Part shown: in pieces, positions 6,401-56,907 of the stretch | Position numbering within the stretch: position 1 is the first letter of the stretch | Layout of the letters: each line of letters begins with the position of its first letter | IMG/VR virus record: IMGVR_UViG_3300024259_000010 | Span: 124,001-188,000 of that record | DNA length: 64,000 bases | Reading direction: 5' to 3' (one strand) | Translations under genes and position numbers: made by a program | The notes under the pieces: generated by a model | What the model saw: the letters and a program-made list of their open reading frames with translations, nothing else | Told to the model about the DNA's origin: nothing | Database searches by the model: none

Positions 6401-7570
6401 GTCCAAGAGATTGAATCTATTAATGGTGCAGGTAGGCATCACTTTATTAGTGACCATATGACTGGTAATACATTTGTGTACACATTAGAAGGTAATAACT
6501 ACGATCTACATGTAGGATATCTTGATTATGTATGGAACGAATCTGTTTCAACATTTGAACTAACTGATGTCAAACATTATGGTTTTACAAATATACAAGA
6601 TATAGTCATTAGTGATAATACTGTATATGTGTTCAACAATGGTAATAGATTACAGCGAATCAATTGGTTTAGACATGTTGGGTTTAATCATAATAAAGAA
6701 TACACTAGTTTATCAGGGCCAACGGAAAACGATATTAGTAGTATTGCTCCATGTGGATCAAATACATTAATATGTGGTACCACGGATGATGATGTTATTA
6801 TCCTAAAAATACATGAAGATGTAGTAGAGCAAATCCGATTACTTGGCGTACCTTCACATGGAATTATAAATGCACATTGGATCAGAAATGGTTATCGTGA
6901 AGCCGATATTATTATTGATGATGATTCCGGTGGACATAGTTCTGCTATATTAAGTTGGGATATTGATATTGATGAAACTCCACCTGTTCCAGTACATAAG
7001 TTATTAACTAGTAATATTCCACACCCAGTATGTTTCTATATAAACGGTGTGACTATTCCTCCTGTACATACAGTGCTTCATGTTGATCTACATCCATATC
7101 TTATGTATGATTATGTTAATTCATATCATTATACTTTATGCGGTATTAAGATATCTTATGCTTATATGCAAGACTTTGATTATACTGATGAGTCTATACC
7201 CACGATGTTAAATAATGATACTGTGATTAATACAGATGGTACAGATAGAAATATTGATACTGATTTCAGTACTAATAACTTCGATCAACAAACTCATGAT
7301 ACAAAGGTTATAGGTTATGTAAATGATCCAATTGATACAGATGATTCAAACGATATCTTAAAATATATCGCACCTGTAAAAACATTTGATTGGATAAATG
7401 ATACTATCGAATGGACTGATGTACCGTTTAGAGTATATAAGAATTATATGGTTAATACATTTAAAATTGGTGACACTACAACAGTTGCAAATTGGAACTT
7501 ATCGTATGATAACAGCTTATATATCCCATTGTCTGCAGATGTGTTAATTCCAGAAGTGGACATAGATTAA
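3452..7570 (+). CDS. Large virion/baseplate structural protein (position of phiKZ gp27), enlarged
   Basis: 1372 aa acidic ORF starting 2 nt after the upstream stop; TQLTHSDFLIP and IPELYEHSDADIVDFL segments; synteny. Confidence 0.55.
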   Translation: MKNVAYAAEAFRHYLSTELFDIYDPVESTRGLTMQVLSGPLGSVPILNEGVTTHLFNYNKRSSDGTYYENLEIFVDDIGDYNKWILCSVNNHVFSGTILDTPKPGNEIENHLPLDRGAGERYSRLPNPVIPKLDAFNLKDLSTILPDNNVKIISKDGKMLPLHNIKVQPDNSTVDSVSGHVYMLIPYAHFLNSGTVSSGNFDDFFMTVDNEKRSFSRIVDTADGTGFYTSSDGFMTFADGMFINSAVQLPLDKEVMQYTTYNTLVTEARKVDIILSNVYDGDDTLVHIDKSITNTRCFSINDCDIFLCDREQLSEGKGLCINNEIWTRCTQLTHSDFLIPNSILDRYKALLGTTELTMVIYLYPGIVSSTIIDSKHKIPELYEHSDADIVDFLKGDHVDTLEYDFWTIESLRDSYFKFVQPGVRRLSDLSVDGFKVEQSNIQALWDKFTLHDFIESMGYYVFNKVVYKDRFFLTADDIDYVNGNIIISRPAGYLDKEVKYIIREIGTNIIFTHTSVMENNVDYTLYSENIINDFNIPAQCHILVDVGILDPQQEYVVDVIELKASHVTFVPPSIDSATERLIIRKHRNFNVFKLQSNKFGIYKWEYVSDPSNIIEFIQINDISYILFTETFWCKTYAVSFGDGFDEIDATFGDIKQGLNINEIVTDYYEDGDLIRTIKRDDYADNVIGKFELQGVDYKEPWFASMQSGIWNNDALWDMDALWDEDTDELVNAYIHDIGVPVEATDIVVRTKLKATHVGGTAFLNDVEFTRSSSLPLTFISDDTEVDYDVIYNTIDELWNIVDNTDTSATVFVSNSKLGPYTPEGFPGSGETIELEESVGFRLPTPDYKMLDAHSKGWIHNNILCISNDDTSIAICAYRAMEVFDTWTLPNGAEVNNAVIREQDSLAFVCEKDTGIVHVLSIDENNLFTFKHSINLAPANIMNITCVADSENIILELESPVADKVAYLYKYIFANEFVESTFELVQEIESINGAGRHHFISDHMTGNTFVYTLEGNNYDLHVGYLDYVWNESVSTFELTDVKHYGFTNIQDIVISDNTVYVFNNGNRLQRINWFRHVGFNHNKEYTSLSGPTENDISSIAPCGSNTLICGTTDDDVIILKIHEDVVEQIRLLGVPSHGIINAHWIRNGYREADIIIDDDSGGHSSAILSWDIDIDETPPVPVHKLLTSNIPHPVCFYINGVTIPPVHTVLHVDLHPYLMYDYVNSYHYTLCGIKISYAYMQDFDYTDESIPTMLNNDTVINTDGTDRNIDTDFSTNNFDQQTHDTKVIGYVNDPIDTDDSNDILKYIAPVKTFDWINDTIEWTDVPFRVYKNYMVNTFKIGDTTTVANWNLSYDNSLYIPLSADVLIPEVDID

Positions 7571-7580
7571 GGAATAAATT

Positions 7581-9683
7581 ATGAATGGAAAAATAAGCCC
7601 CTTAAAAACGTACAATAGTTTCGACATGGAGATGACTGCTGATTCTATTGGCCGATTGGCAAAGATACAATTGTTTACTAAACAAGTTGATCATGTACTA
7701 TCTGATTTTACTTCTGATATACCGTTTCTAACTGATGTTGACATTGTTGTCATATTAGGTGATAAAGAATTAAGTAGAGGTATTGATTATGTTATTTATG
7801 AAGAAGAAGAAAATGGTATATTTAAAACAAAGTTAAAACTTATTAATCACCAGTTGCTTATTGATACTGTGGATAATACTAAAGTCAAGATCTATATAAC
7901 ACGACGTAGTATTGATACTGCACTCGTATATAACGCCCTTGGTGATGATATTGTATCACAAGAGAATAGAGTAAATGCCCATAGAGATAATGATTACATA
8001 GCAAATGAAATTGATGGTATTACAAGGTATGTGACTTCTAATCATTTAACAGAGGTTGTAAATAATCCTAATGTTTCAGGTGTTTGGGAATTGGTTGTTA
8101 AGACGAGTTGTTCTTTTCAGTCGATCAGTGATCTGATAAAATTCCATCCTAATCCATACGCGATGATAGATGCAATTCAAGAAACCATTAATACATATGA
8201 TAAATTCAGTTCCGAATTAGGCGATGATACAATAGTAACTGAAGCCCCAAATAAGAAAATAATACTAGGGCTAGACTATATTAAAATTGTAAATCTATTA
8301 CTATCGGATGGTGGTATTGTAACAGAATTAGAAAGTATAATTAGTGCTGACTACTTAGGATTTACTAATTTCTTACTTAAGTATTCTATTACACTACAGG
8401 ATCATAAATTCTTGGATGCTAGGTTATATGATATATATATGAATCCTGATATTGATAATCCGATTAACCTCGGTGGATTGGATGGATTATTAGGCGATCT
8501 ACAATATCATATGTATCCTGGGTTTACTCATGTACATGCGATAGATACGAATGGTACTAGTGAAATTATAGGTAATGATGATGGTGATATTGTTAGCCCA
8601 CCCGCTGATGAGGAACTATGTGTAATGCCTGTAGTAAATACACCACCAGTGGCTAACGCACAAAATGTGACTACAGAGATGGATATAGATAAGGATATCG
8701 TATTGACAGGTAGTGATACAGATGTGACCGATGTATTAACATATACAGTAGATGATGAACCTACACATGGTAGTTTATCTGGTACTGAGCCTAATCTGAC
8801 GTACATACCTGATGGTGGTTATTATGGACCTGATTCTTTTACATTCATAATTAACGATGGGTATGTAGACTCACTTCCAGCGACTGTAGATATTACTGTC
8901 AATGAAGTGTTTGAAGATCCATTTGCTATTGAATATGGATTAAATAACTTTGCTGCGTCTATTGCTGCGGTAAACCAGGTAGATCAGACACTAAATATAA
9001 ACATGTCAGAAATGCCTTACATTCTTACAGGTATTACAATTGAGGATGGTTATGATGTAGAGATTGAATGTGAATGGGCTCATAATTATAATGGTAAAAC
9101 TAAGCGTACAATGTGTGCTGTTTCGAATGATCAAGTGGTAGATTGGCCGCCTACAATGCCAGATGCCCCTGAACCATATGGTGCATTAGATGTAATATAT
9201 GCTTTGGAAGAAAAGGGTGATACATATAGGTATACAAATGAGGGTAGATCTATCTGGCAGTATTCCGGATATGGTTACTTTAATGGTATGCAAACCGATG
9301 GGTTCTATCAGGAAGATGTGCGATATGTCATAGGTAAGAGTGGTACTACCATGTATAGAGGTAATGACACTACTGTAACAGGATGTACAGGTATTAGGAA
9401 TTCTAATAGAGGTATAACATTATTTGGTTCACAAATAAATGGTACTTATAGTCACCCAATACAAATGCACGGTTATGCATACAATTGTATTTTCTATTCA
9501 TTGAAGATATGGTCTAGTGATACAAGAAACGATCAAACTTTATTACATCATTTAATTGCAGTACCTTCCGGATGGACAGATGGTATTATAACAGCTACTG
9601 TTAACTGTGTTTATGATAAAGTAGATGGTGTATTCCACGAACCTGGATTCATGTCATTTGGTATTACTGAATCTATTACATAA
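7581..9683 (+). CDS. Virion structural protein (position of phiKZ gp26) with C-terminal cadherin/Ig-like and lectin-like extension
   Basis: 700 aa. VNTPPVANAQNVTT...LTGSDTD...LTYTV...PTHGSLSG..PNLTYIP...GPDSFTFIINDG is a typical bacterial Ig-like (Big_9/cadherin-like) repeat. Confidence 0.6.
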   Translation: MNGKISPLKTYNSFDMEMTADSIGRLAKIQLFTKQVDHVLSDFTSDIPFLTDVDIVVILGDKELSRGIDYVIYEEEENGIFKTKLKLINHQLLIDTVDNTKVKIYITRRSIDTALVYNALGDDIVSQENRVNAHRDNDYIANEIDGITRYVTSNHLTEVVNNPNVSGVWELVVKTSCSFQSISDLIKFHPNPYAMIDAIQETINTYDKFSSELGDDTIVTEAPNKKIILGLDYIKIVNLLLSDGGIVTELESIISADYLGFTNFLLKYSITLQDHKFLDARLYDIYMNPDIDNPINLGGLDGLLGDLQYHMYPGFTHVHAIDTNGTSEIIGNDDGDIVSPPADEELCVMPVVNTPPVANAQNVTTEMDIDKDIVLTGSDTDVTDVLTYTVDDEPTHGSLSGTEPNLTYIPDGGYYGPDSFTFIINDGYVDSLPATVDITVNEVFEDPFAIEYGLNNFAASIAAVNQVDQTLNINMSEMPYILTGITIEDGYDVEIECEWAHNYNGKTKRTMCAVSNDQVVDWPPTMPDAPEPYGALDVIYALEEKGDTYRYTNEGRSIWQYSGYGYFNGMQTDGFYQEDVRYVIGKSGTTMYRGNDTTVTGCTGIRNSNRGITLFGSQINGTYSHPIQMHGYAYNCIFYSLKIWSSDTRNDQTLLHHLIAVPSGWTDGIITATVNCVYDKVDGVFHEPGFMSFGITESIT

Positions 9684-29082: not shown

Positions 29083-29221
29083 ATAGTAATAAGTAATAGT
29101 ATACCATCACGGTATACTATTACTTTTCTATACAGGTTATTATATGATCAGTGTACTCCAATGGATTTTAGATATATATTACTTCCATAGATACAATAGT
29201 TAAATGAAAGGAACTATTATT

Positions 29222-29701
29222 ATGTACAAAACAATTATCGCACTTCTGACATTAGTTATCACAATTAACATTAATGCTGAGACGATCGGTATCCGGAACA
29301 ATAATCCGGGTAATCTGACAAAACCTACTGGAGAAGTCTGGTTGGGAACAATTGGATATGATGAACAGGGATACGTGATATTCGAGGACGTGTTCTTTGG
29401 CACGCGTGCCTTATATAAGAATTTTCAGACAAGAGTCCGTCGGACTCCTGAGATGAGCTTATATAAATATATGCGCGACGTGTATGTTCAGTCTCCCAAT
29501 GGAGTAAAAGAGGCTGCGTATATAGCTAAGAAGATGAACATTAGTCCATATACTTCATTGAAGGATATTAACATAGATGAGTTGGTTATCCATGTTGCTT
29601 GGTTCGAATCTAATCTCAGACTTAACCAAACGTGGATTGATTACGTAAAGGATCAGTTCAAGTTAGAAGGGTATAAGAATGTGGTGGCCTATAATGATTA
29701 A
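29222..29701 (+). CDS. Signal-peptide-bearing lysozyme-like protein (RNNNPGNL family)
   Basis: MYKTIIALLTLVITININA-E signal peptide; GIRNNNPGNL, FED..FG.RA and C-terminal WFES; start at 29222 follows an AAAGGA RBS. Confidence 0.7.
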   Translation: MYKTIIALLTLVITININAETIGIRNNNPGNLTKPTGEVWLGTIGYDEQGYVIFEDVFFGTRALYKNFQTRVRRTPEMSLYKYMRDVYVQSPNGVKEAAYIAKKMNISPYTSLKDINIDELVIHVAWFESNLRLNQTWIDYVKDQFKLEGYKNVVAYND

Positions 29702-38178: not shown

Positions 38179-39619
38179 ATGGATAAGAAACCTGTTTACC
38201 AGTTCTTACATTCCACATACTGGAAGAAGAAAGGTAATGATGAAGATGCAGTCGTTGCCTGTCTCAAAGATGTAGATACTGGGAAAACTAAATTAGAAGT
38301 TATCACCAACCCAAAACGTAGTATTGGTATAACCAGAAAAGGGTTACAGGAATCTACTAATACTAAAAAGATTTGTGAAGATAATAACAATCTAGATATT
38401 TACACAATTGATAATAAAGATTTACGGGATGAGCTACAAGAAAAGTTACTTGGTTACAGTGGTGGTTATACATCACTCAAGAAACTTATTAACTCCCCAT
38501 ATGTATATGGAGCTGATATTGACATTTCTGTACTTATTAAACAACACTTTCTAAAGCAGTCAGATCGTACTGCTAAAAGCTTCAGGGTAGGTGGTCTGGA
38601 CATCGAAACCTCTGTTTTAGGGGGTAGAGAAATCCTAATGATTACATACGTTTCACCGGAGCTAAAAGTCTTTACTGCAGTTCTAGACTCATTCGTTGAA
38701 AACGTTTCTATCGATTCTATTAAAGAAAAGTTTAAAAAAGAATTAGCTGAGTTCAAAGGAAAGCTAAATAAAGAAACTTTAAAGATATTTGATGAGTATG
38801 CATCTGATATCATGCCCAATATTAATATCACTTACCATAAGACTGAAGTAGATGTCATCACTTGGATCTTTAAAATGATTCATGCGGATAAACCTGACTT
38901 CATTTCAATTTGGAACATGGGTTACGATATCCCATATATGCTAGATCGTCTGAGAGTACATAATGTATTCCCACATAAGATCATGTGTCATCCAGAAGTA
39001 CCATGGCAATATCGTATATGTTCATATAAAGCAGATCGTAATCCTAACGTAAGTCACTTCTCATATAAATGGGATGTGTTTGAATTATCTGGTTACAGTC
39101 AGTTCTATGACTCAATGTGTCTATTCAGTCGAATCCGTAAACATGAAGGTGTTGAGGATAGTTATAAACTCGAAGCTATTGCTAAGAAGATAACTGGTGC
39201 TGGAAAGATGGACAATGATAATGCTAATCACTATACCATGCAAACAGAGAAACCCGGTGAGTATGTTGTCTACAATATTTTTGATAGTTTGTTACTACCT
39301 CTAATTGAAAAGAGATGTAAAGATATTGAATCTATGATGATGTTACTTGAGGATACTAGTATTGATAGTTTCGCTCAACAGACAACTCAATTGAAAAACT
39401 GGTTCTATCGGTATTGTAAAGATAAAGGTAAAATGCCTGCTTCTTGGTATGGTAAGATTGAACATGAAACAGATGGTATGTTACATAACACAGGTGGTAA
39501 TGTATTAGCTCCAGGGCTAGCATGGCGAACTGGTGTGAATAAGATTAAAGAATTATTATCTTGTTCTAAAAACATTTTATCTAAACTTATTATTCTAGCA
39601 TGTGATATTGACGTTGCCT
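38179..39619 (+). CDS. Family B DNA polymerase, exonuclease-containing subunit (phiKZ gp82-like), exon 1
   Basis: ExoI LDIETS, ExoII WNMGYDIPY, YKLEAIA, ExoIII YNIFD; ends at CDIDVA, the first half of polymerase motif A. Confidence 0.85.
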
Positions 39620-40618
39620 TTTGTTTGAAAAAAAACATTGGGGCCTTGTAGTAGTAATACTATAATGAAAATTTCCTTAATTGACTGGAACCCACATAAT
39701 CAAATAAACTACAACATAACCAGTAATGGTAAGTGTGAATGTTTTAAAATTATTTGTTGTGGCAATCAGCAGCGAAGCTGTTACTGTAGTTACAGTAACC
39801 TTACTATGTAAATAGATAAGCCTATGTGATACATAGGGTGAACGTTCAGAGACTATCCCGACAGGGAGTACACCTTTCATAGGGTGGAAATAGGAAACAT
39901 CCTACGGGATGATAATATAGTCCAAATTCTCAAATAATCATACAGATGTATTTCAGTGTAGTTTAAGTATATATTACTTAAATAGTAAGGAGATATAAAT
40001 ATGTATGAGATAGATACTTATAGTTATGAAGAAAAAGTATCATTATACGAACATGGTTTCCCGGATTACATCCTGACAATAGATGGTAGAGTATGGACGA
40101 ATAAACAACGTCGATGGTTGACTATTGATAAAGGAGGGTGTGTACTTTTAGCTTATGGTCCACAACAATACAGTAGAGTAAGTGTACGAGTATTGGTAGG
40201 TAATATATTTATTAACCCACCAGTGTTCAACAACCATTGTCAACCACTTTGGTTCAATGTTGATTATTACATTTATTCTGATGGTAAAGTGTGGAGTTGT
40301 TTCTCTGCTAAATGGTTGTTGCCAAACTTAGTAAAGCAATATCATTATATTAATATAAGTGGTAGTGCGTATTTACTAAATAGATTGGTAGCACAGACAT
40401 ACGTACCCAATCCAGATAATAAACCAGAAGTGAATCATAAGAATGGAATTAAAATAGATAATCGTGCAGAGAACCTTGAATGGTGTACGAGATCTGAGAA
40501 TATGATTCATGCGTATAATAATGGATATCTTGATGATAGTCTTGCGAAAGCACAGGCTGCCAGATAAGATATTTAAAATTAAGATAGATTGTTCTATCTT
40601 TTTTTGTTTGAGAATTAG
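39620..40618 (+). mobile_element. Group I self-splicing intron carrying an HNH homing endonuclease
   Basis: Exon 1 ends in U39619 and the intron ends in G40618. Core elements: AATTGACTGGAA (P), AATCAGCAG (Q), GTTCAGAGACTA (R), AATATAGTCC (S). The guide CATTG-GGGC pairs with 5' exon GCCU and 3' exon CAATG. Splicing restores DIDVA-S-MYPS in frame. Confidence 0.92.
40001..40567 (+). CDS. Intron-encoded HNH homing endonuclease
   Basis: [40 protein letters not shown]; two NUMOD4-like (Y.I..DG.VW) repeats. Confidence 0.9.
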
Positions 40619-46502: not shown

Positions 46503-49500
46503 ATGATTTTAATTAATGGCATCCAACAGGGCGGCGCGGGACTAGATCCCGTAGATGAAGCAAAGGTTGACAACATCACTGTTGAAAACCCAGTTAATCT
46601 CGATGATGTAGTAGCTGAAACAGATGCTAATACTAACCATGCTGATGGTCCTGTTACGGATCATACGGATGTATCAAATGCAGGTAGTGGAGCTATTATT
46701 ACAGTAGCTGAGCGTAATGCTATTACAGAAAATAGTGGTAAAGTATCTGCTGATGAATCAGTTGAAACACATAGTGATATTTCTTCCAAAGGAAGTGGAG
46801 CTATTATTACTGATCAAGAGAGAATTGACTTAGGTATTGCTAAAGATGCGAGTCATACTGAACATGTAGCAGATGATGTTGAATGGTCTACTGAACATGA
46901 GCATGTGAATAGTATGAAGGATGTTATTGATCATGTCTGGAGTGCAGGTGCATGTGGTGGTGTGGATAACTTTAAAATTACTAAAATAGGTAGTGGTGGA
47001 GTTACTGTAACTGACGGTTATGCGGTATTAAGAAATGATGTAACATCTCACGCATCATTAGATGGATATCATATACCGGCTTCAGGAGATATTTATGTTG
47101 CCAATAATAAGACAAGTATTATCTATATTGACCAAGCGACACAATCTGTATTACATACGGATGCGATTGATCAAGTTATGATGAATAATCAGAGAACTAT
47201 TATCTATGCTGTTAATAGAGTTGATGATGCTTTAAATATTGTAGACTTCAGAGCTTATAACGTAGATTATCTTAGAAAAAATTCACTCAAAGACTGGAGT
47301 GTTAATGGTATTGAATATGGTGGTGGCGCTTTTGTAACAGATGGTGCAGTCACACATACAATGCAAATCTCTTCTGGTTTATTTTTCTTATTAAATACTG
47401 TATTAACTACCCCTGAAATAAATACCGACGTTACCCATGTGGATAATGATCCATTAGTAGATATATTTGATTATGTTTATACTGATGGTGATGGTGATTG
47501 GGATCGTAATCCAGGATCTACAGTAATTAACAAGTTACAATATGATACAGGAACTGGGTTAGCCAATATTGGTAATAAAGATTTTGGTTGCCATTATGTA
47601 TATACAGTGTTGAATTCTCCTAGCCATTACGTAGTTGTATTAGGCAAAGGGTCATATTCTTCATATGCTGATGCGATTGCTACTCCAGTACCATCTGGAT
47701 CATTAGTACCACCAGATCTGGCAAAACCATCTACAGCTACACATATTGCAACTATTATTACTAAACAAGATAATACATGGTTCTATGATGTATTGACACC
47801 TTTCTATGATAATTTAGTGTCATCTTTTAATTTACCTATTACTCATAATGAGCATAATGGTATTCAAGGTGGTGATGATGTCAATAAAGAATATTATCAT
47901 ATAACTGAAGCTCAAGAAGCTGCCATTGGCGGAAGTATTGCTAAAACAGCCTTAATAACTGTAGCATCTGCTGTTGACTTGAATGACATGCCCGTGTCTG
48001 AAGATCAACAAGCTGCTATTAATAATGCTGTTGTAGGTATGTATGATCATATAGGTGGTTATAATGGTACTACTAATGTTCCTTCATTGGATGATCGTAA
48101 TGATCCAGGTACTCCTATTATAGCAGATATTCTTAAAGGACATACTTATACTGTTGAAGTAGAAGGTACGTTCTTTGGTGAATCAGTTGAAGTCGGTGAT
48201 CACATTATTTCAAATCAAGATGATCCATCTGAATTATCACATTGGTCTAGAGTTAATAAGAACATTAGTTTTGGTTCAACCCAAGGAACAGCTTGTGAAG
48301 GTAATGATGGTCGTTTACCATCTGTTAATGAAAAAGCTGCTATGAAAGGTACTGAAGTAGGTGATCCTCCTTCAGCTACAAATGAATTCATTACTAATGA
48401 TGATGCTCGATTATCTGATGATCGTGATCCTAATACCCATGCTGGTAATCATATATCCGGTGGAGAAGATCCAATACGTGAAGCTACTAATGGGCAGAAT
48501 GGATTAGCAACAGCTTCTCATATTCAAAAGATAGAAGCTAGTTATTCTGTTAAGCATTCACATGTTAATAAGGTTAACCTTGATACTATTGATCAGAATA
48601 TGGCTAAAGCGGATTCTCCTGAGTTTGCAGGGGCTACTATCGGTGGTGTTAACTTCAATGATACTCTTGCATTAATGCATAATCCAACAGGGTTTGACCG
48701 TATGAATGTTGCATCATATGGAACACTTACATTAAACGGTGGTACCACTAGAACAGTTACGCATGGTCTTAATGGTCAGGATATTGAATACTATAGACAT
48801 GGTGTTAAAATATCTAAAACTGAAGCTCAGGTAACTACACAATTCCCTAATACCGAAGGACTATGGTTTATCTATTATAATGAAACTGATACATTAGTGA
48901 TAACACAGACTCCTTGGAATGTTGCGGCTGATCATCATGTGTTTGTAGCTATCCTATATTGGGATGCTGTAAATGAAGTAGGTGTTCTTGGTGAAGAGCG
49001 TCATGGACTGATGGACCCCTATACTCATGATATTATGCATCATGGAATTGGTTCATTGCACCGTGGTGGATTTGATCCAACCTTTACAATAGGTAATGGT
49101 AGTGCAGATGCACATTGTGAGATCCAAGGATTCACAGCCGGTTCATTCTCAGATGAAGATATTATCAATGTCAACGATGAACAGACTACATATGAAGTAT
49201 GGTGGAAAGAGGGATCAGAGACCGCTCCAGTATGGAGATGGGAAACTGCTTCAGCTGCTGCTGTAAGTATGGCTGGCTCTAGACCATATTGGAATCAGTT
49301 AACGGGTGGTACATGGCAACGTACTGAGATGACTGATAATGATTATATGTGTATGCATCCTATTGCACTTAATCGTTATGGTGTTACTAATAAAGTAATT
49401 CTCATTATGGGTGAAAATCTATACGAGACTGCTGCTGAAGCACGTGTTGCTGCACCTGGTGAATTAAATACGATTAGATTCGGTAGTTTGCCTTCACCTG

Positions 49501-52010: not shown

Positions 52011-52042
52011 CATAGATCTACAGCCTAGGCTGTAGATCTATG
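52011..52042. repeat. Perfect 32-bp palindrome
   Basis: CATAGATCTACAGCCT|AGGCTGTAGATCTATG with no spacer. Confidence 0.95.
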
Positions 52043-52112: not shown

Positions 52113-52325
52113 ATGAGTAAAGATAATGGTGAAAGAGCAATAGCTGAGGCACGTATTATATGCTCATGGATAGATAGTCATATGAATCAATTTGCTAACT
52201 GTCCACAAAGTGATTTTATAAAAGAGAAAATTAAAAAAGATTTAGAGTGTATTAAACGGAGTTGTACACAGTCAACATACAAATGGTACGCACATGTATA
52301 TAAAGCTATATTGGATGTAGAATAA
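52113..52325 (+). CDS. Hypothetical protein
   Basis: 70 aa; GGGGG RBS; late-type motif at 52066. Confidence 0.5.
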   Translation: MSKDNGERAIAEARIICSWIDSHMNQFANCPQSDFIKEKIKKDLECIKRSCTQSTYKWYAHVYKAILDVE

Positions 52326-52381: not shown

Positions 52382-55300
52382 ATGAGGAAGTATTTAAATA
52401 AAGCCTTACTGACATCTATTATGTTTATTAGCATGATGAGCAGTAATGGTTATGGGCAAACACCATATACAGATGGTATGCCTATTACAGATATTGCAAA
52501 TAAACAACCTATGAGTATTATATCTGGTAAGATTAATTATGGTTGGGATCAACTATATAACTTATCTCAAGGACAAGGAGCATCCGGTCTAAGAATCGAT
52601 GCATTGGAAGCTCAAACAAATTACTGGAACTCGGTGTCTAATAATGTGACACAGAATTATGAAGCTGCTGATACATTATTAGATAATTCTAAACTTAATA
52701 TCACTAATGGTGTATTTGTTACATCACTGAGTTCTACTGATGGTAGTGAGGTAGTTAGTTTATCCCCAAGTGAGGTATCTGTATTTAACGGAACTAGTGG
52801 AAGTAAACTAACAGACTTAGATATATCTATTACTGATGGTAGTGATAGAGCATCATTGACTCCAGGTACTCTCGCTTTAGATAATTTATTTATATTACAA
52901 ACAACTTCTAGTAAATTAGAAGTAAGTAAAAATGATCCAAACTATACCACACAGATTAATGGTGATGTGCAGATTAGTAAAGGTGATGCTTCTCTAGATT
53001 CATTAACAATGGGATATTGGACTATCAATAATTGGTATGACATTATAGGACCAATACCGCTGCAATATACTATTGAAAGAGGTATATGGGCAGGTCAAGT
53101 ATTATATTGGACAGCTACTACTCAGGGGAGACCAACCTATAATAATAATGATGTAACATTATACTGGGATGGGGAAAAGTGGAGACTGACCGACAATGGA
53201 GCGATTTATTATGTATGTACTTCCAACACACAACATCCACCATGGGACCATGAATGGAATGCAGTACCATCAGGTTTAACATATAATCCTACAACAAGTC
53301 CTTTACTCACACGGCAATTAAACTCTAAACAGGAGATGATGAATGTTGTAGACAGTAAAGTAGATATGTTAAATGGTACTGCTACTAATCTAACTGTCGA
53401 TACATTATTAACAGCAGACGATGTTATTATAACTGAAAGTGCTCTTATTGACGGTGTAGATATAAAAGATTATGCAGTGTATATTGAAGATGATCCTGAG
53501 AACTGGGCGAAGTTAACAAGTGAAAAACTACGAATAGATTCAGTTATTGAAGAATGGGAACTTCCAACTGAAACCAATCGGATGGATCTGACATCAAGTG
53601 GTATTGGGATAGATGATTATACGAATGATAAACATGCTTCTTTTAACCCAAGTGCGGTAACCTTTGGTACGACTACTGATTCCGCTACTTTATCAGCATC
53701 CCACCTAGCATTGGGACACAATGATACTTCTGTAGAATCAGATGGTACTGATGTAATGATAGGTAATACATACATAGATACTATAATCAAAGCTAATAGT
53801 TTGGTTGATATACAAGCAAGTGTTGATATCATGGATGATCTTACTGTAGACGACCGATCATACTTCTATGGTACTGTAAATTTCAAAGATACTGTATGGT
53901 TAACCGATGGTGATAATGGTGGTCAAGTATGGATGCAAGATACTAGAGTTACTCTGGTCGATGTTGCATTTACTACATCCGATGGATTATGTACGTTCGT
54001 TGTTCCTGATCATGGGTTAAATAATAACAATAATACAGATGTAGCTATATTAGCTAGTAATCAAAATGATCTACCAATTGGTGTTCAATACGTTATTGAT
54101 GTCTTGGATAACAATACGTTTACAGTTCCTGCTGGTGCTGGTGCTGATGGATTAGGTGGTACTGCTGATATAAATGAAGATGGTAAAACAGCATATGTAT
54201 ATAATTCATGGACTGACAGACATAGTTTTAACAGCCCTGTAACATTCGACGTAAATCATCAGGTGACTATGGAAGGACCTGTTGTTATTGCTGAAGCAAC
54301 ACTCGATGATCTCTATGTAAAAGGTAGTACTTATCTCAATTCCGATAGAGGTACTGGTAATGTAATATTACGAGGCCAAAGTGTTGTGTTAGATAATCAA
54401 GCATTTACTTCTGGAATGGGTGATGATATCCTAGTTGCAAAAACAGACCATGGATTAATTAGTGGTGACAATGTCAATGTTACATTGTCAAGTAATACTG
54501 GAGATCTACCAAATGGTGCATATGGTGTGTATGTACTCAATGACAATATGTTTATGGTAGACTCTGGTGGTGTTATCAATGGTGAAGGTGGTACAGCAAC
54601 TTTCACTGAACAAGATTCAACTCCATATCAATATGTTAATGCCTATGATAAACATTACTTTTATAGTGAAGTGGATTTTTCAGAACCAGTTACTATTAGT
54701 GAAGTGGATTTTTCAGAACCAGTTACTATTAGTGAAGGGACACTTGGCAATATTACATTAAGTGATGATATAGATGCTGCTGAATATAATATTGAAAATG
54801 TTGATGATATGGATGTCACTACGGTTTCAGTAGATGGCTATACTGTTGCAGATATCGATTCATTTGATTTACTATTAGGTAATTCTTCTTTGGGGACTAA
54901 GATTGATTCAAATAGCTCTGGTATTGAAATGGATCATAATGTTAAAATGAATTTCCAACTTAATGTGGCAGGTAAATCAACATTTAATTATCTCAATGGA
55001 TATAATGATTTCAAAATTAGAAACTATACTTCGGATGAAGTAGATGCACCATTCACATCTGTTGTAGGTAATACAGTAACATTTAATTATTATCACGGTT
55101 TGCAGAATGGTGATCAAATTCGTATTCAGAATTCATCTGCTGAAAATGAACTACCAAATGGATACTACAACATATCTCGAATAGATAGTAGTACCTTTAC
55201 CGTTGATGCTGGCCAGCCTGGTACTGGAGCAGCTGGTACTGCAGATGTAGCAGAAGAAAGTAAAGATGTACTTTTCTACGATGTAGGTGATGATGAATTC

Positions 55301-55951
55301 ACATTCAATAGTCCCGTATCATTTGGATATGGTCATCAGGTAACTATAGATGGACCTATTGATATAAATGACGGTCTTACATTAGGTGGTGATATAGATG
55401 CTGCTGTATATGATATTAATAATGTTGGTGAGTTACAAGCTACATCTTTAGAAGCTTCAGATTCCACTGGTTATTTACTTACGTCTGTAGTTGGAGGCGA
55501 GGGTGATATACGTTGGGTACCAGGAACAGTAGGAGGTCTTGCAACAATTGACTTCCGTATTGAACCTAATAACAATGATGATGGTAATTATAGATTCGGC
55601 TTGTCTTCTGGTAGCACAGGGGCTAATTCCATTGAGATATTCTCACCAAATAGTGCAATTAAAAATACTAGATTATCTTGTGGTAATATCACATATATTA
55701 ATGGTAATACAGACTTAAATAGAGCAGCTCAAACTGTTGTCATAGGAGCCACTTCTGGTACTGACAATACTGATACTCTATTGGAAGTAAAGTCAACACC
55801 TGATTTACCGGGTTGTTTCTTATTACCACGAATGAGCACAGCTGATCGCGATACATATATAAGTTCACCAACTGCAGGACATATGATATTTAATACAACA
55901 ACCACAAAAGCTGAAGTGTACGATGGTTCTACATGGCAAGCTTGTTGGTAA
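52382..55951 (+). CDS. Large fibre/adhesin-like protein with N-terminal signal peptide
   Basis: MRKYLNKALLTSIMFISMMSSNGYG-Q leader; three HGL..GD.V......LPNG.Y.....D..TFTV repeats; C-terminal LLPRMSTADRD...P.AG.MIFNTT....EVYDG..W domain. Confidence 0.65.
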   Translation: MRKYLNKALLTSIMFISMMSSNGYGQTPYTDGMPITDIANKQPMSIISGKINYGWDQLYNLSQGQGASGLRIDALEAQTNYWNSVSNNVTQNYEAADTLLDNSKLNITNGVFVTSLSSTDGSEVVSLSPSEVSVFNGTSGSKLTDLDISITDGSDRASLTPGTLALDNLFILQTTSSKLEVSKNDPNYTTQINGDVQISKGDASLDSLTMGYWTINNWYDIIGPIPLQYTIERGIWAGQVLYWTATTQGRPTYNNNDVTLYWDGEKWRLTDNGAIYYVCTSNTQHPPWDHEWNAVPSGLTYNPTTSPLLTRQLNSKQEMMNVVDSKVDMLNGTATNLTVDTLLTADDVIITESALIDGVDIKDYAVYIEDDPENWAKLTSEKLRIDSVIEEWELPTETNRMDLTSSGIGIDDYTNDKHASFNPSAVTFGTTTDSATLSASHLALGHNDTSVESDGTDVMIGNTYIDTIIKANSLVDIQASVDIMDDLTVDDRSYFYGTVNFKDTVWLTDGDNGGQVWMQDTRVTLVDVAFTTSDGLCTFVVPDHGLNNNNNTDVAILASNQNDLPIGVQYVIDVLDNNTFTVPAGAGADGLGGTADINEDGKTAYVYNSWTDRHSFNSPVTFDVNHQVTMEGPVVIAEATLDDLYVKGSTYLNSDRGTGNVILRGQSVVLDNQAFTSGMGDDILVAKTDHGLISGDNVNVTLSSNTGDLPNGAYGVYVLNDNMFMVDSGGVINGEGGTATFTEQDSTPYQYVNAYDKHYFYSEVDFSEPVTISEVDFSEPVTISEGTLGNITLSDDIDAAEYNIENVDDMDVTTVSVDGYTVADIDSFDLLLGNSSLGTKIDSNSSGIEMDHNVKMNFQLNVAGKSTFNYLNGYNDFKIRNYTSDEVDAPFTSVVGNTVTFNYYHGLQNGDQIRIQNSSAENELPNGYYNISRIDSSTFTVDAGQPGTGAAGTADVAEESKDVLFYDVGDDEFTFNSPVSFGYGHQVTIDGPIDINDGLTLGGDIDAAVYDINNVGELQATSLEASDSTGYLLTSVVGGEGDIRWVPGTVGGLATIDFRIEPNNNDDGNYRFGLSSGSTGANSIEIFSPNSAIKNTRLSCGNITYINGNTDLNRAAQTVVIGATSGTDNTDTLLEVKSTPDLPGCFLLPRMSTADRDTYISSPTAGHMIFNTTTTKAEVYDGSTWQACW
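54664..54737 (+). repeat. Exact 33-bp in-frame tandem duplication (SEVDFSEPVTI x2)
   Basis: TAGTGAAGTGGATTTTTCAGAACCAGTTACTAT twice, plus a partial third copy. Confidence 0.95.
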
Positions 55952-56002
55952 CACATAACTTAAATAAACAAATTGTTAAACTAGAAAGAAAAGGAATAGA
56001 AA

Positions 56003-56407
56003 ATGAAGAAATTAATTATTATTGGATTGATGGCACTTATCGGCGGTGGATTATTTGGAGATGTTTACCCAGCTCCTACTAACACTACATTCACATTAAC
56101 CGTAACTGCTTTTGATGTCCGTAAGACTGAAGCTAATGTAGATGGCTCATGGGATATCATTACTGATGTTGTATTGGATAAAGAATTATCTAATGCTGAT
56201 GAAGAAGGTTCTAATGAATCTGTTAAGGTCCGCACTATCCGTGCTGATGTTACAGTATTTGCAGAAGAGATTGCTACAGCTGCTGGTATTGACATTGAAG
56301 TCGAAGGATGGGAAGCATTGTTAACCACAAAGCCATATGCTGAAGTTCGAGTAGCTGTCATTACTGCCGCTCAGATGAAAGTCATTGCTCTTGTAATGGC
56401 TCCCTAG
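56003..56407 (+). CDS. Signal-peptide-bearing hypothetical protein
   Basis: MKKLIIIGLMALIGGGLFG-D leader; acidic mature part. Confidence 0.65.
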   Translation: MKKLIIIGLMALIGGGLFGDVYPAPTNTTFTLTVTAFDVRKTEANVDGSWDIITDVVLDKELSNADEEGSNESVKVRTIRADVTVFAEEIATAAGIDIEVEGWEALLTTKPYAEVRVAVITAAQMKVIALVMAP

Positions 56408-56418
56408 TGTGAACTAAA

Positions 56419-56817
56419 ATGATAAAAAAGTATTACAAATGGACATTGGAAGATGGTGATGTCACTATTATAATACCTGATAAATATAAATTACCAGACT
56501 TCGAGAATGAATGGGTCACGATCAAGGATAATGTGATGACTATTCGAAATGGTTATTCATGGGATGGATGTAGTCCTAAAAGAATACTATTTGGAAAACT
56601 CATTGTAGGAACTTGGGATGGACCCATTGATCCGGGGACTGGTAAACAAGTAGCTTATATACCTAGCTTAGTACATGATATATTATGTCAATTTGAAATT
56701 GGTACTCGTAAGAGAGCTGATCGTATATTTAGATATTTACTAGATCTTGTGGATTTTAAATTCAAAAGATTGTATTATAGGGCTGTAAGAATATTTGGAT
56801 TCTTTGTATCATTTTAA
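56419..56817 (+). CDS. DUF1353-like protein
   Basis: GYSWDGCS, SLVHDILCQ, RKRADRIF, YYRAVRIFG. Confidence 0.75.
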   Translation: MIKKYYKWTLEDGDVTIIIPDKYKLPDFENEWVTIKDNVMTIRNGYSWDGCSPKRILFGKLIVGTWDGPIDPGTGKQVAYIPSLVHDILCQFEIGTRKRADRIFRYLLDLVDFKFKRLYYRAVRIFGFFVSF

Positions 56818-56907
56818 TATTACAAAAGACACGTAGTGGTTAATTTCACTACGTGTCTTTATTTCCTTTTTATTTGGATTCAGTACGGATATCTTGAATG
56901 TGATTAA

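What the first reader, a model, noticed from the sequence alone, without database searches (positions are those of the whole stretch)
52382..56817. Operon of signal-peptide-bearing fibre-like and small proteins plus DUF1353
Seen: a 1189-aa protein built from fibre/adhesin-like modules starts with a Sec-type leader, as does the next gene (MKKLIIIGLMALIGGGLFG). The unit is bounded by the 32-bp palindrome and a terminator. Known: tailed-phage fibres assemble in the cytoplasm and normally lack signal peptides. Inference: these proteins are exported, either displayed on the infected cell (receptor masking, adhesion) or added to virions at lysis; alternatively a recently captured host adhesin.
Basis: partly seen in the sequence, partly recalled or inferred. 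Interest (0 to 1): 0.65.

Follow-up and report, generated by a model that had tools for sequence, protein, structure and literature searches.

The report
Exported phage fibre with exported partner
A marine jumbo phage encodes a 1189-residue tail-fibre-type protein and a small neighbouring protein that both begin with secretion signals, and the same pair recurs in other uncultured phages, so this fibre is probably folded outside the cytoplasm, which is unusual for tailed phages.

Summary
Window 52382-56817 carries three co-oriented genes: P0002 (1189 aa), P0003 (134 aa) and P0004 (132 aa, DUF1353). A 70-aa ORF lies just upstream. Two strong hairpins flank the unit.

- **Leaders.** P0002 and P0003 start with classic n-h-c leaders (P0002 ...GYG|QTPY). 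Real export is supported because the arrangement is conserved. Two other phage contigs (L007, L008) carry the same pair: a protein ending in the same C-terminal region, then a P0003 homologue (37-48% identity) with a leader cut at the aligned position.
- **Wider pattern.** Other leader-bearing proteins with the same C-terminal trimerisation domain (PF26696, PTL_trimer) end the tail modules of small phage contigs. Among PTL_trimer proteins, 31 of 35 leaders put Q at +1, the Bacteroidetes Q-rule.
- **P0002 is phage fibre stuff.** It has three endosialidase-type beta-barrels, a conserved pre-terminal domain and PTL_trimer. Residues 1-760 are orphan. Capture of a host adhesin is not supported.
- **DUF1353** is now the TtaP class of phospholipase A2. 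P0004 keeps the H-D...D catalytic spacing.

My favoured reading is a fibre plus its downstream assembly partner, both rerouted to the periplasm. Whether the fibre later joins virions or acts on the envelope is open. The host is unresolved.

The parts
52011..52042 (.). Perfect 32-nt palindrome (14-bp stem, 4-nt loop) directly after the stop of the upstream 683-aa LamG tail-like gene. Probably the hairpin that ends the upstream operon. Unique in the genome.
   Evidence: MFE -27.8 kcal/mol, z -7.45. Assemblies break here.
52113..52325 (+). 70-aa ORF with four Cys and a GGGGG-type SD. It lies inside the hairpin-bounded unit and upstream of the fibre gene. No family match.
52382..55951 (+). P0002, a 1189-aa acidic fibre-type protein rich in T, D, G, S and N (163 D+E against 54 K+R) with an N-terminal secretion leader.
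52382..52459 (+). Predicted Sec/SPase I signal peptide of P0002 (aa 1-26, MRKYLNKALLTSIMFISMMSSNGYG, then QTPY). Q at +1.
   Evidence: The same QTPY start of the mature chain is seen in P0074.
53939..55336 (+). Three beta-barrel modules of about 100 aa (aa about 520-607, 664-752, 878-965), each followed by an FNSPVxF...HQVT linker. Endosialidase/E1-FCCH-type barrels, candidate glycan-binding units.
   Evidence: (End_beta_barrel E 0.024, below cut-off). A paralogous module lies in a 1318-aa ORF elsewhere in the genome.
54664..54737 (+). Perfect 33-bp tandem duplication (SEVDFSEPVTI twice). It is absent from the 99%-identical protein P0001.
55328..55801 (+). Pre-terminal 'domain X' (aa about 983-1140), shared only with the leader-bearing proteins P0006 and P0016. 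It co-occurs with the P0003 family.
   Evidence: 38% identity, E 2e-17.
55802..55948 (+). C-terminal PTL_trimer domain (PF26696): LPRMSTADRD...GHMIFNTTTTKAEVYDGSTWQACW. A small helix plus three-stranded sheet.
   Evidence: pLDDT above 90; weak fold matches to CBA120 TSP3, Mtd and the collagen XV/XVIII trimerisation domains.
56003..56407 (+). P0003, 134 aa, with a leader at aa 1-19 (56003-56059). The mature chain of about 115 aa is acidic and carries an invariant EGWEA motif. Conserved partner gene of the fibre.
56419..56817 (+). P0004, 132 aa, DUF1353 (TtaP-class phospholipase A2). No leader. H86, D87 and D101 have the same spacing as TtaP H70, D71 and D85.
56825..56860 (+). Intrinsic terminator: 15-bp stem, 6-nt loop, T-rich tail.
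   Evidence: MFE -22.7 kcal/mol, z -8.65.

Best explanation
P0002 is a trimeric, phage-type fibre and P0003 is its dedicated downstream partner. This is the classical 'fibre gene followed by a small assembly or adaptor gene' layout, but here both proteins are routed through Sec into the periplasm.

**Proposed steps.**
1. SPase I removes the leaders. P0002 would then start with Gln, which can become pyroglutamate.
2. The fibre folds and trimerises outside the cytoplasm. The C-terminal PTL_trimer domain nucleates the trimer, and P0003 acts on the adjacent conserved 'domain X'.
3. The mature fibre therefore cannot join cytoplasmic tail assembly. It can meet virions only when the cell lyses, or it acts free on the cell envelope.
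4. The three endosialidase-type beta-barrels are the likely ligand (glycan) binding units.
5. P0004 is a TtaP-class phospholipase A2 encoded at the fibre/lysis junction. It need not belong to the pair.

**Shown:** gene anatomy, the leaders, conservation of the pair, the folds and the domain families.

**Inferred:** actual export and cleavage, the P0003-fibre contact, trimer formation and the final destination of the fibre.

**Confidence.** About 0.75 that both proteins are exported. About 0.45 for the whole fibre-plus-partner reading given here.
For: - **Leaders and starts**.
- **Conserved two-gene module in independent contigs.** In L007, P0006 (leader VNA|QEPG) is 42% identical to P0002 983-1185 at E 1e-21 and is followed by P0155 (37% identical to P0003, E 2e-24, leader ASG|QTY). 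In L008, a gene end carrying PTL_trimer is followed by P0156 (48% identity).
- **P0016.** It has a leader and domain X (E 2e-17) and is followed by 131- and 135-aa genes, the same layout as here, though no DNA was served.
- **Only the C-terminal roughly 200 aa of the fibre co-varies with the partner.** That is where tail-fibre chaperones act (established for T4 gp38 and the Mu, P2 and lambda Tfa proteins; my own knowledge).
- **Position in tail modules.** Leader-bearing PTL_trimer proteins are the last tail-module gene, with ATGA start/stop overlaps to the upstream tail gene, in L003 (capsid...TMP, 671 aa, P0074), L004, L005 and L006.
- **Q at +1** in 31 of 35 leaders.
- **Phage-fibre folds**, and PTL_trimer in cyanophage tail fibres and a megaphage collagen-like fibre.
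- **No rival sorting signal.** No lipobox Cys and no T9SS C-terminal domain.
Against: - No signal-peptide predictor and no experiment. Export is inferred from sequence features and their conservation.
- The complex prediction for P0002 980-1189 with mature P0003 gave no verdict.
- P0003 matches no known chaperone family.
- P0003 has D, not Q, at +1.
- The phage belongs to the phiKZ-like jumbo group, whose tails assemble in the cytoplasm. No virion-attachment domain could be recognised in P0002.
- The third gene is not conserved between the contigs: DUF1353 here, a C-terminally anchored protein of about 100 aa in L007 and L008.
- The host phylum is unsettled. The Q-rule points to Bacteroidota, but 62% SD usage does not fit Bacteroidia ribosomes (PMC7797042).
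Confidence: 0.45

Rival explanations
1. The pair is exported but is not a virion part. The fibre stays in the periplasm or on the envelope of the infected cell. There it binds the phage's own receptor glycan (receptor masking or superinfection exclusion, or preventing newly released virions from sticking to debris), or it makes the infected cell adhere to particles.
For: - The leaders are real by conservation.
- The unit is its own hairpin-bounded transcription unit, separate from the upstream leaderless tail genes.
- No virion-attachment domain was recognised.
- Phage-encoded Q-rule secreted proteins of unknown function are already reported in Porphyromonas phages and were proposed to modify the envelope (PMC10367356).
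- PTL_trimer repeats are common in Bacteroidota secreted FISUMP-type proteins.
Against: - In the small phage contigs, the leader-bearing PTL_trimer gene is translationally coupled to tail genes and sits where the receptor-binding fibre normally sits.
- No route to the cell surface is visible: no lipobox, no T9SS CTD, no outer-membrane barrel.
- A lytic jumbo phage has less obvious need for exclusion.
Confidence: 0.28
2. The leaders are not functional secretion signals. P0002 is an ordinary cytoplasmically assembled tail fibre whose hydrophobic N-terminus is buried in the baseplate, or whose true start is a downstream Met. P0003 is a membrane-tethered or cytoplasmic accessory protein.
For: - P0002 has internal in-frame ATGs (M14, M18, M19, M33).
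- Its h-region is only moderately hydrophobic (Kyte-Doolittle mean 2.05).
- It lies next to leaderless tail-like genes.
- SignalP was not run.
- A published note says capsid proteins of Porphyromonas phages also score as signal peptides.
Against: - SD-like sequence lies only before the first ATG.
- P0003 has no alternative start.
- Leaders recur in at least 6 fibre homologues and all 3 partner homologues despite 37-48% identity. The cut site is at the aligned position, and Q at +1 is found in 31 of 35, which has no reason to hold for a non-cleaved N-terminus.
- h-regions of 12-16 residues are too short for a membrane span.
Confidence: 0.12
3. The unit is an envelope-attacking or lysis-associated set. 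The exported fibre-like protein and its partner work with the DUF1353 phospholipase A2 to weaken the outer membrane at the end of infection.
For: - P0004 keeps the PLA2 catalytic H-D...D.
- DUF1353 lies near the endolysin in Fusobacterium phage FNU1.
- In L004 the fibre gene is followed by small membrane or lipoprotein genes. In L007 and L008 the third gene is a tail-anchored membrane protein.
Against: - P0004 has no leader and is not conserved with the pair.
- DUF1353 also sits beside tail-fibre genes in Francisella phage KIRK.
- A 1160-aa modular fibre is not needed for lysis.
- No holin or endolysin was recognised in the unit.
Confidence: 0.07
4. P0002 is a recently captured host cell-surface adhesin.
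For: - The PTL_trimer module is frequent in bacterial genomes, mostly Bacteroidota (56 of the 80 best loci).
- It often sits behind Q-rule leaders.
Against: - Only the last roughly 70 aa have bacterial relatives. Residues 1-760 are orphan in 1.84 billion representatives.
- G+C equals the phage average.
- The beta-barrel is paralogous to another gene of the same phage.
- The closest longer relatives (P0006, P0016) are on phage-like contigs.
- The partner was not found in 401 Bacteroidota genomes sampled.
Confidence: 0.04

Closest known systems
Phage tail fibres and tailspikes with an endosialidase-type beta-barrel and a small C-terminal or N-terminal trimerisation module (K1F, NF and phi92 endosialidases; cyanophage tail fibres carrying PTL_trimer)
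   Same: - The beta-barrel fold (Foldseek E 9e-4).
- PTL_trimer is present in annotated cyanophage tail and tail-fibre proteins.
- Modular, acidic, Ser/Thr/Asn-rich build.
- A small accessory gene lies directly downstream.
   Different: - Those fibres have no signal peptide and assemble in the cytoplasm.
- No sialidase or other catalytic domain is present here.
- The N-terminal 500 aa are orphan.
Bacteroidetes Q-rule SPase I substrates, including phage-encoded ones in Porphyromonas gingivalis phages (PMC5837995; PMC10367356)
   Same: - An n-h-c leader followed by Gln at +1 in P0002 and in most leader-bearing PTL_trimer proteins.
- Phage genes that obey the rule have been noted before.
   Different: - The reported Porphyromonas phage cases are small proteins of unknown function, not fibre-type proteins with a conserved exported partner.
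- The host here is not established, and SD usage argues against Bacteroidia.
Tail-fibre assembly chaperones encoded downstream of fibre genes (T4 gp38/gp57A, Mu/P2/lambda Tfa); my own knowledge
   Same: - A small gene lies immediately downstream of the fibre gene.
- It is co-conserved with the fibre's C-terminal region only.
   Different: - P0003 has no sequence or family similarity to them.
- It carries a leader.
- Binding is not shown (one search gave no verdict).
TtaP, the DUF1353 phospholipase A2 of the typhoid-toxin islet (PMC11525133)
   Same: - The Pfam DUF1353 hit is above the cut-off.
- Similar size: 132 against 125 aa.
- No leader.
- H86, D87 and D101 match the spacing of H70, D71 and D85.
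   Different: - The match covers only the catalytic core (profile positions 48-80 of 91).
- Activity is untested.
- PHROGs labels the family 'tail assembly chaperone'.
Phage-encoded exported receptor blockers (T5 Llp, phi80/N15 Cor) and phage fibre proteins that act as cell-surface adhesins after lysis (Streptococcus mitis SM1 PblA/PblB); my own knowledge
   Same: Phage proteins that act on the envelope of the producing cell, or fibre proteins with a second life outside the virion.
   Different: - Llp and Cor are small lipoproteins unrelated to fibres.
- PblA and PblB have no signal peptide and reach the surface only through lysis.

Membership tests
Sec/SPase I signal peptide | Positively charged n-region, a hydrophobic h-region of 7-16 residues without charges, and small residues at -3 and -1 | tested here: met
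   - P0002: +3 n-region, 12-residue h-region, G-Y-G|Q.
- P0003: +2 n-region, 16-residue h-region, L-F-G|D.
- This was a rule-based check only. SignalP is not available.
Sec/SPase I signal peptide | The leader is conserved as a feature, not as sequence, in homologues, with the cut site at the aligned position | tested here: met
   - P0155 ASG|QTY, P0156 VAG|AEVY and P0003 LFG|DVY.
- P0006, P0016, P0048, P0062, P0074 and P0075 all carry leaders.
Sec/SPase I signal peptide | Actual translocation and cleavage | not testable with these tools
   Needs N-terminal sequencing or mass spectrometry, or PhoA fusions.
Bacteroidetes Q-rule substrate | Gln at +1 of the SPase I site | tested here: met
   - P0002 GYG|Q.
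- Two more leaders in the genome obey the rule (AYA|Q, AMG|Q).
- 31 of 35 leader-bearing PTL_trimer proteins do so.
- P0003 itself has D at +1; its homologue P0155 has Q.
Bacteroidetes Q-rule substrate | The host belongs to Bacteroidota | tested here: inconclusive
   - For: the Q-rule, and PTL_trimer loci that are 56/80 Bacteroidota.
- Against: a core SD upstream of 62% of genes, while Bacteroidia ribosomes ignore SD (PMC7797042).
- No tRNA genes were found in the 64-kb window, no bS21 gene was found in the whole record, and there is no close cultured relative.
Lipoprotein (SPase II) signal | A lipobox with Cys at +1 | tested here: not met
   There is no Cys in residues 1-40 of P0002 or P0003.
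Type IX secretion cargo | A C-terminal T9SS sorting domain (TIGR04183/TIGR04131) | tested here: not met
   NCBIfam scans of P0002 and of residues 1000-1189 found no family at E <= 1. The C-terminus is PTL_trimer instead.
PTL_trimer (PF26696) | A match to the family profile at the C-terminus | tested here: met
   - The precomputed Pfam hit PF26696 is on the 99%-identical P0001 and on homologues.
- 329 phmmer hits align to residues 1117-1189.
- Nearly invariant columns are listed.
- The local Pfam scan did not list it.
PTL_trimer (PF26696) | Forms a trimer | not tested
   The fold resembles the collagen XV/XVIII trimerisation domains and parts of TSP3 and Mtd only weakly (E 0.1-1.6).
Endosialidase beta-barrel (PF12195) | A profile match above the gathering score | tested here: not met
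   E 0.024 and 15 bits against a cut-off of 35. The fold is similar, so this is fold-level likeness, not family membership.
DUF1353 / TtaP-class phospholipase A2 | A Pfam PF07087 match above the cut-off | tested here: met
   23.6 bits against 22.5, E 3.8e-5. phrog_1158 at E 3.3e-16.
DUF1353 / TtaP-class phospholipase A2 | A catalytic His-Asp pair plus an Asp 15 residues after the His | tested here: met
   H86, D87 and D101 in P0004 against H70, D71 and D85 in TtaP.
DUF1353 / TtaP-class phospholipase A2 | PLA2 activity | not testable with these tools
   Needs an enzyme assay.
Tail-fibre assembly chaperone (Tfa/gp38-type) | Sequence or profile similarity to a known chaperone family | tested here: not met
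   P0003 has no Pfam, PHROG, NCBIfam or PADLOC hit. The Atlas gave leads below 0.8 only. The analogy is positional only.
Virion tail fibre | Presence in the virion, or an N-terminal baseplate-attachment domain | not testable with these tools
   Residues 27-500 are orphan. No virion proteome exists for this uncultured phage.

The most novel reading that the evidence does not exclude
A set of phages with Bacteroidota-style secretion signals, including this marine jumbo phage, fold their distal receptor-binding fibre in the periplasm together with a co-exported chaperone. They then attach it to otherwise complete virions only at or after lysis. That would be an extracytoplasmic last step of tailed-phage assembly. 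It would give the fibre access to periplasmic chemistry (pyroglutamate capping, disulfides, possibly O-glycosylation) that cytoplasmic fibres lack.
Probability: 0.2. Interest if true: 0.85.

Novelty: new variant of a known kind. Interest (0 to 1): 0.6.

Why it matters
Tailed-phage fibres are taken to fold and assemble in the cytoplasm. A conserved fibre-plus-partner pair in which both proteins carry secretion signals, seen in a jumbo phage and at the fibre position of small phage tail modules, means one of two things. Either a step of virion maturation takes place outside the cytoplasm, or phages routinely export fibre-derived proteins to act on their host's envelope.

Both readings affect how receptor-binding proteins are predicted in metagenomic phages, how host range is inferred, and how such fibres should be expressed for structural or applied work (they may need periplasmic expression with the partner).

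The Q at +1 signature is also a cheap host-phylum clue for uncultured phages. Its clash here with heavy SD usage is itself a question worth settling.

Tried and rejected
**Searches that found nothing close**
- blastn and tblastn of the unit and of P0002 against 50,697 phage records: no match.
- Back-translated scans of IMG/VR with P0002 and P0003: no relatives.
- Word-index protein searches returned only near-identical copies, until a two-sequence profile found P0156.
- PDB sequence searches with P0002, its C-terminus, the A1 profile and P0004: nothing significant.
- Atlas look-alikes for P0003 and P0002: scores below 0.9, so leads only.
- P0004 against phage records: no match.
- PADLOC: no hits.
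- Pfam on the other leader-bearing proteins and on neighbour genes of the related contigs: nothing.

**Tests without a usable answer**
- Complex prediction of P0002 980-1189 with mature P0003: no verdict, score 0.00. This is evidence neither for nor against binding.
- The P0003 profile in 5 plus 401 Bacteroidota genomes: not found in those searched.
- No RNA runs hold the stretch, so expression timing is unknown. Laying contigs from four seawater runs showed only near-identical strains and assembly breaks at the palindrome and the 33-bp duplication.

**Ideas dropped**
- Periplasmic O-glycosylation: D-[ST]-[ALVIMT] sites are not enriched in P0002 (10 against 9.1 expected). They are about 2-fold enriched in P0074, P0075 and P0048, which is weak.
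- Promoter hunt: TATATAGTA upstream of P0002 is not above chance, and sigma-70-like sites are at the shuffle level.
- A conserved mature N-terminus as a sorting or attachment motif: none beyond the leader.

Full report
**Setting**

The window is bases 124001-188000 of a 235,833-bp IMG/VR virus record, 34% G+C and estimated 91% complete. It encodes a multisubunit-RNA-polymerase beta piece that is 27-29% identical to those of phiKZ-like jumbo phages. It is therefore a distant, uncultured member of that group. The target stretch occurs nearly identically in contigs from at least four seawater metagenome runs. No cultured phage or IMG/VR contig is close at the DNA or protein level.

**The observation**

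Upstream are two overlapping, leaderless tail-like genes:
- a 1148-aa protein whose C-terminus hits PHROG minor-tail and virion families;
- a 683-aa protein with three LamG domains that hits baseplate and tail PHROGs.

Directly after their stop lies a perfect 32-nt palindrome (52011-52042; -27.8 kcal/mol, z -7.5). After the DUF1353 gene lies a textbook terminator (56825-56860; z -8.7). Ribonucleotide reductase follows the unit.

**The leaders**

- P0002 begins MRKYLNK-ALLTSIMFISMM-SSNGYG|QTPY.
- P0003 begins MKK-LIIIGLMALIGGGLF-G|DVY.

Both have the n-h-c build, with small residues at -3 and -1 or at -1. Neither has a lipobox cysteine. Their h-regions of 12-16 residues are too short for a membrane span. 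In a crude whole-genome ORF screen, only about ten of 258 ORFs had comparable N-termini.

The first ATG of P0002 is preceded by AAAGGAAAGGGA, and the internal ATGs are not. 62% of the phage's genes carry a core SD, against 7% at random positions. P0003 has no in-frame Met between M10 and M125, so its leader must be translated.

**Why I take the leaders as real**

The exhaustive phmmer search found 329 relatives of P0002. Nearly all matched only the last 70 or so residues. A few reached further:
- P0006 (321 aa; 42% identity over P0002 983-1185; E 1e-21);
- P0016 (1105 aa; 38% over 982-1142; E 2e-17).

Both begin with leaders (VNA|QEPG; ANA|QRGF).

On its phage-like contig (L007, with RusA, DUF2303 and DUF2800 genes), P0006 is followed by a 131-aa protein, P0155. 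P0155 is 37% identical to P0003 (E 2e-24) and has the leader MKKYIVAMLVLLTAGFASG|QTY. A profile of the two found a third member, P0156 (48% identity). It lies on a 1.1-kb contig directly behind a gene end that carries the same C-terminal domain.

In the three-way alignment, the leaders differ in sequence but end at the same column. The mature chains start with a shared (D/Q/E)-(V/T)-Y...PAP motif.

**Wider pattern**

The C-terminal module is Pfam PF26696, PTL_trimer (precomputed hits). Several proteins that end in it and start with leaders are the last gene of phage tail modules. Their starts overlap the upstream stop (ATGA):
- L003: capsid, connectors, tail tube, chaperone, 745-aa tape measure, 671 aa, then P0074 with IQS|QTPYD, then a 199-aa protein with AAA|QEV;
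- L004 (P0075);
- L005 (P0048);
- L006 (P0062, followed by a homologue of the 199-aa protein, also with a leader).

With a strict rule, 35 of 134 Met-started PTL_trimer proteins have leaders, and 31 of those have small-x-small|Q. That is the Bacteroidetes Q-rule (PMC5837995; PMC10653852). Enrichment of this size is hard to explain unless these are true SPase I sites. Phage genes that obey the rule have been noted in Porphyromonas phages (PMC10367356), but not for fibre proteins.

**What P0002 is made of**

The mature chain is acidic and rich in T, D, G, S and N.
- **Residues 27 to about 500:** no relative anywhere.
- **Three beta-barrel repeats** (about 520-607, 664-752, 878-965): they align at 29-39% identity. 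They also align with a segment of another large ORF of this phage and with two metagenomic proteins.
- **Fold of the repeats:** the AlphaFold model of one repeat (pLDDT about 90 over the barrel) matches the beta-barrel of the phi92, K1F and NF endosialidases and the E1 FCCH domain. Pfam End_beta_barrel scores below its cut-off. This is fold-level likeness, not family membership.
- **Residues 983-1140 ('domain X'):** shared only with P0006 and P0016.
- **The last 45 residues:** they model confidently as a helix plus a three-stranded sheet. They match CBA120 TSP3, Mtd and the collagen XV/XVIII trimerisation domains weakly.

PTL_trimer also occurs in annotated cyanophage tail and tail-fibre proteins. 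It heads a collagen-like fibre of about 1000 aa in a 735-kb megaphage.

In bacterial genomes, the best 80 loci are 56 Bacteroidota and 24 others. There the module is often found as tandem repeats behind Q-rule leaders and in front of FISUMP domains.

NCBIfam finds no T9SS sorting domain in P0002.

**P0003**

The mature chain is about 115 aa, acidic and carries an invariant EGWEA motif. It has no family match. Only three members are known. It was not found in 401 sampled Bacteroidota genomes.

It co-occurs with domain X plus PTL_trimer, not with the variable N-terminal parts. P0006 has only about 125 residues ahead of domain X, whereas P0002 has about 950.

A small gene directly downstream of a fibre gene that tracks the fibre's C-terminal region is the signature of tail-fibre assembly partners (my own knowledge of T4 gp38 and the Tfa proteins). 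A partner that acts on an exported fibre must itself be exported, which fits the paired leaders. The one complex prediction gave no verdict.

**P0004**

P0004 hits DUF1353 above the Pfam cut-off and phrog_1158. DUF1353 was shown in 2024 to be a new class of phospholipase A2, TtaP, with catalytic H70, D71 and D85 (PMC11525133). P0004 has H86, D87 and D101, the same spacing.

It has no leader. It is not conserved with the pair: L007 and L008 instead have a protein of about 100 aa with a C-terminal membrane anchor.

In cultured phages, DUF1353 sits beside tail-fibre genes (Francisella phage KIRK) or near the endolysin (Fusobacterium phage FNU1). I treat it as a neighbour at the fibre/lysis junction.

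**Interpretation**

My best-supported reading is a phage fibre and its assembly partner, both rerouted to the periplasm. Two things are open.
- **Destination.** Synteny in the small phages argues for a virion role: last tail gene, translationally coupled. That would require attachment at or after lysis. The separate transcription unit here, the lack of a recognisable attachment domain and the cytoplasmic tail assembly of phiKZ-like phages argue for a free envelope-acting protein.
- **Host.** The Q-rule and the taxonomic bias of PTL_trimer point to Bacteroidota. Heavy SD use (also seen in L007 and L008, but not in L004-L006) does not fit Bacteroidia ribosomes (PMC7797042). No phage bS21 gene is present.

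The captured-host-adhesin idea is not supported, for the reasons given under the rival explanations.

**Limits**

- No signal-peptide predictor, no expression data and no virion proteome were available.
- The P0003 family has three members, so its profile is weak.
- Several supporting contigs are short metagenome pieces of unknown host.

Noticed in passing
window 54664-54737: A perfect 33-bp tandem duplication inside P0002 (SEVDFSEPVTI twice) sits in the linker after the second beta-barrel. The 99%-identical protein P0001, from a 236,983-bp contig, lacks one copy. Logan assemblies break at this spot.
   Followed up: partly
whole genome G000 (window = 124001-188000): A host-clue conflict. A core SD motif (AGGA, GGAG or GAGG) lies 5-20 nt upstream of 62% of genes, against a 7% background. 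Yet three of about five SPase I-type leaders have Q at +1, as in Bacteroidota, whose ribosomes do not use SD. No bS21 gene was found. The other contigs with the P0003 family (L007, L008) also use GGAG-type SD. L004-L006 do not.
   Followed up: partly
whole genome; in the window e.g. 9725, 25660, 29175, 37321, 37563, 39970, 62043 (+ strand): The 8-mer TATATTAC is enriched 13-fold in upstream intergenic regions (33 of 144 regions; 64 sites in the genome). From memory it resembles the early-promoter motif of phiKZ-like phages. It is absent upstream of the fibre unit.
   Followed up: partly
G000:C1:19058-19354 (-) and 47943-48722 (-), outside the window (loci L089, L090): Two paralogous leader-bearing proteins (98 and 259 aa) have Q-rule sites (GAYA|QVRNVKG, GAMG|QTRNIKG) and similar mature N-termini. 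Neither has a Pfam match.
   Followed up: partly
window 29204-29701 (+): A 165-aa protein with a leader (..ININA|ETIGIRNNNPGNL). No Pfam match. It is another exported product of this phage.
   Followed up: no
L003 9943-10542 and L006 2402-3016: A second kind of leader-bearing partner. Homologous proteins of about 200 aa (AAA|QEV, LSA|QTA) directly follow the leader-bearing PTL_trimer fibres P0074 and P0062. One has a weak TNF/C1q-like Pfam hit (E 0.0085, below the cut-off).
   Followed up: partly
L092 (LR756501.1, 735-kb uncultured megaphage) 5701-9291: A 1196-aa protein has PTL_trimer near the N-terminus followed by about 900 aa of Gly-Pro-X collagen-like repeats. Two LamG-type proteins precede it. 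The window likewise has a LamG protein just upstream of the fibre unit.
   Followed up: no
window 38179-39651 and 40001-40567: A DNA polymerase fragment of 490 aa (phrog_3011) is followed by an HNH endonuclease gene. The polymerase may be split by a homing-endonuclease insertion.
   Followed up: no
P0016 contig (ENA, 5081 bp; no DNA served): A 1105-aa protein with a leader, domain X and PTL_trimer is followed by 131-aa and 135-aa genes. This mirrors the 1189, 134 and 132-aa layout of the window. The small genes could not be read.
   Followed up: partly
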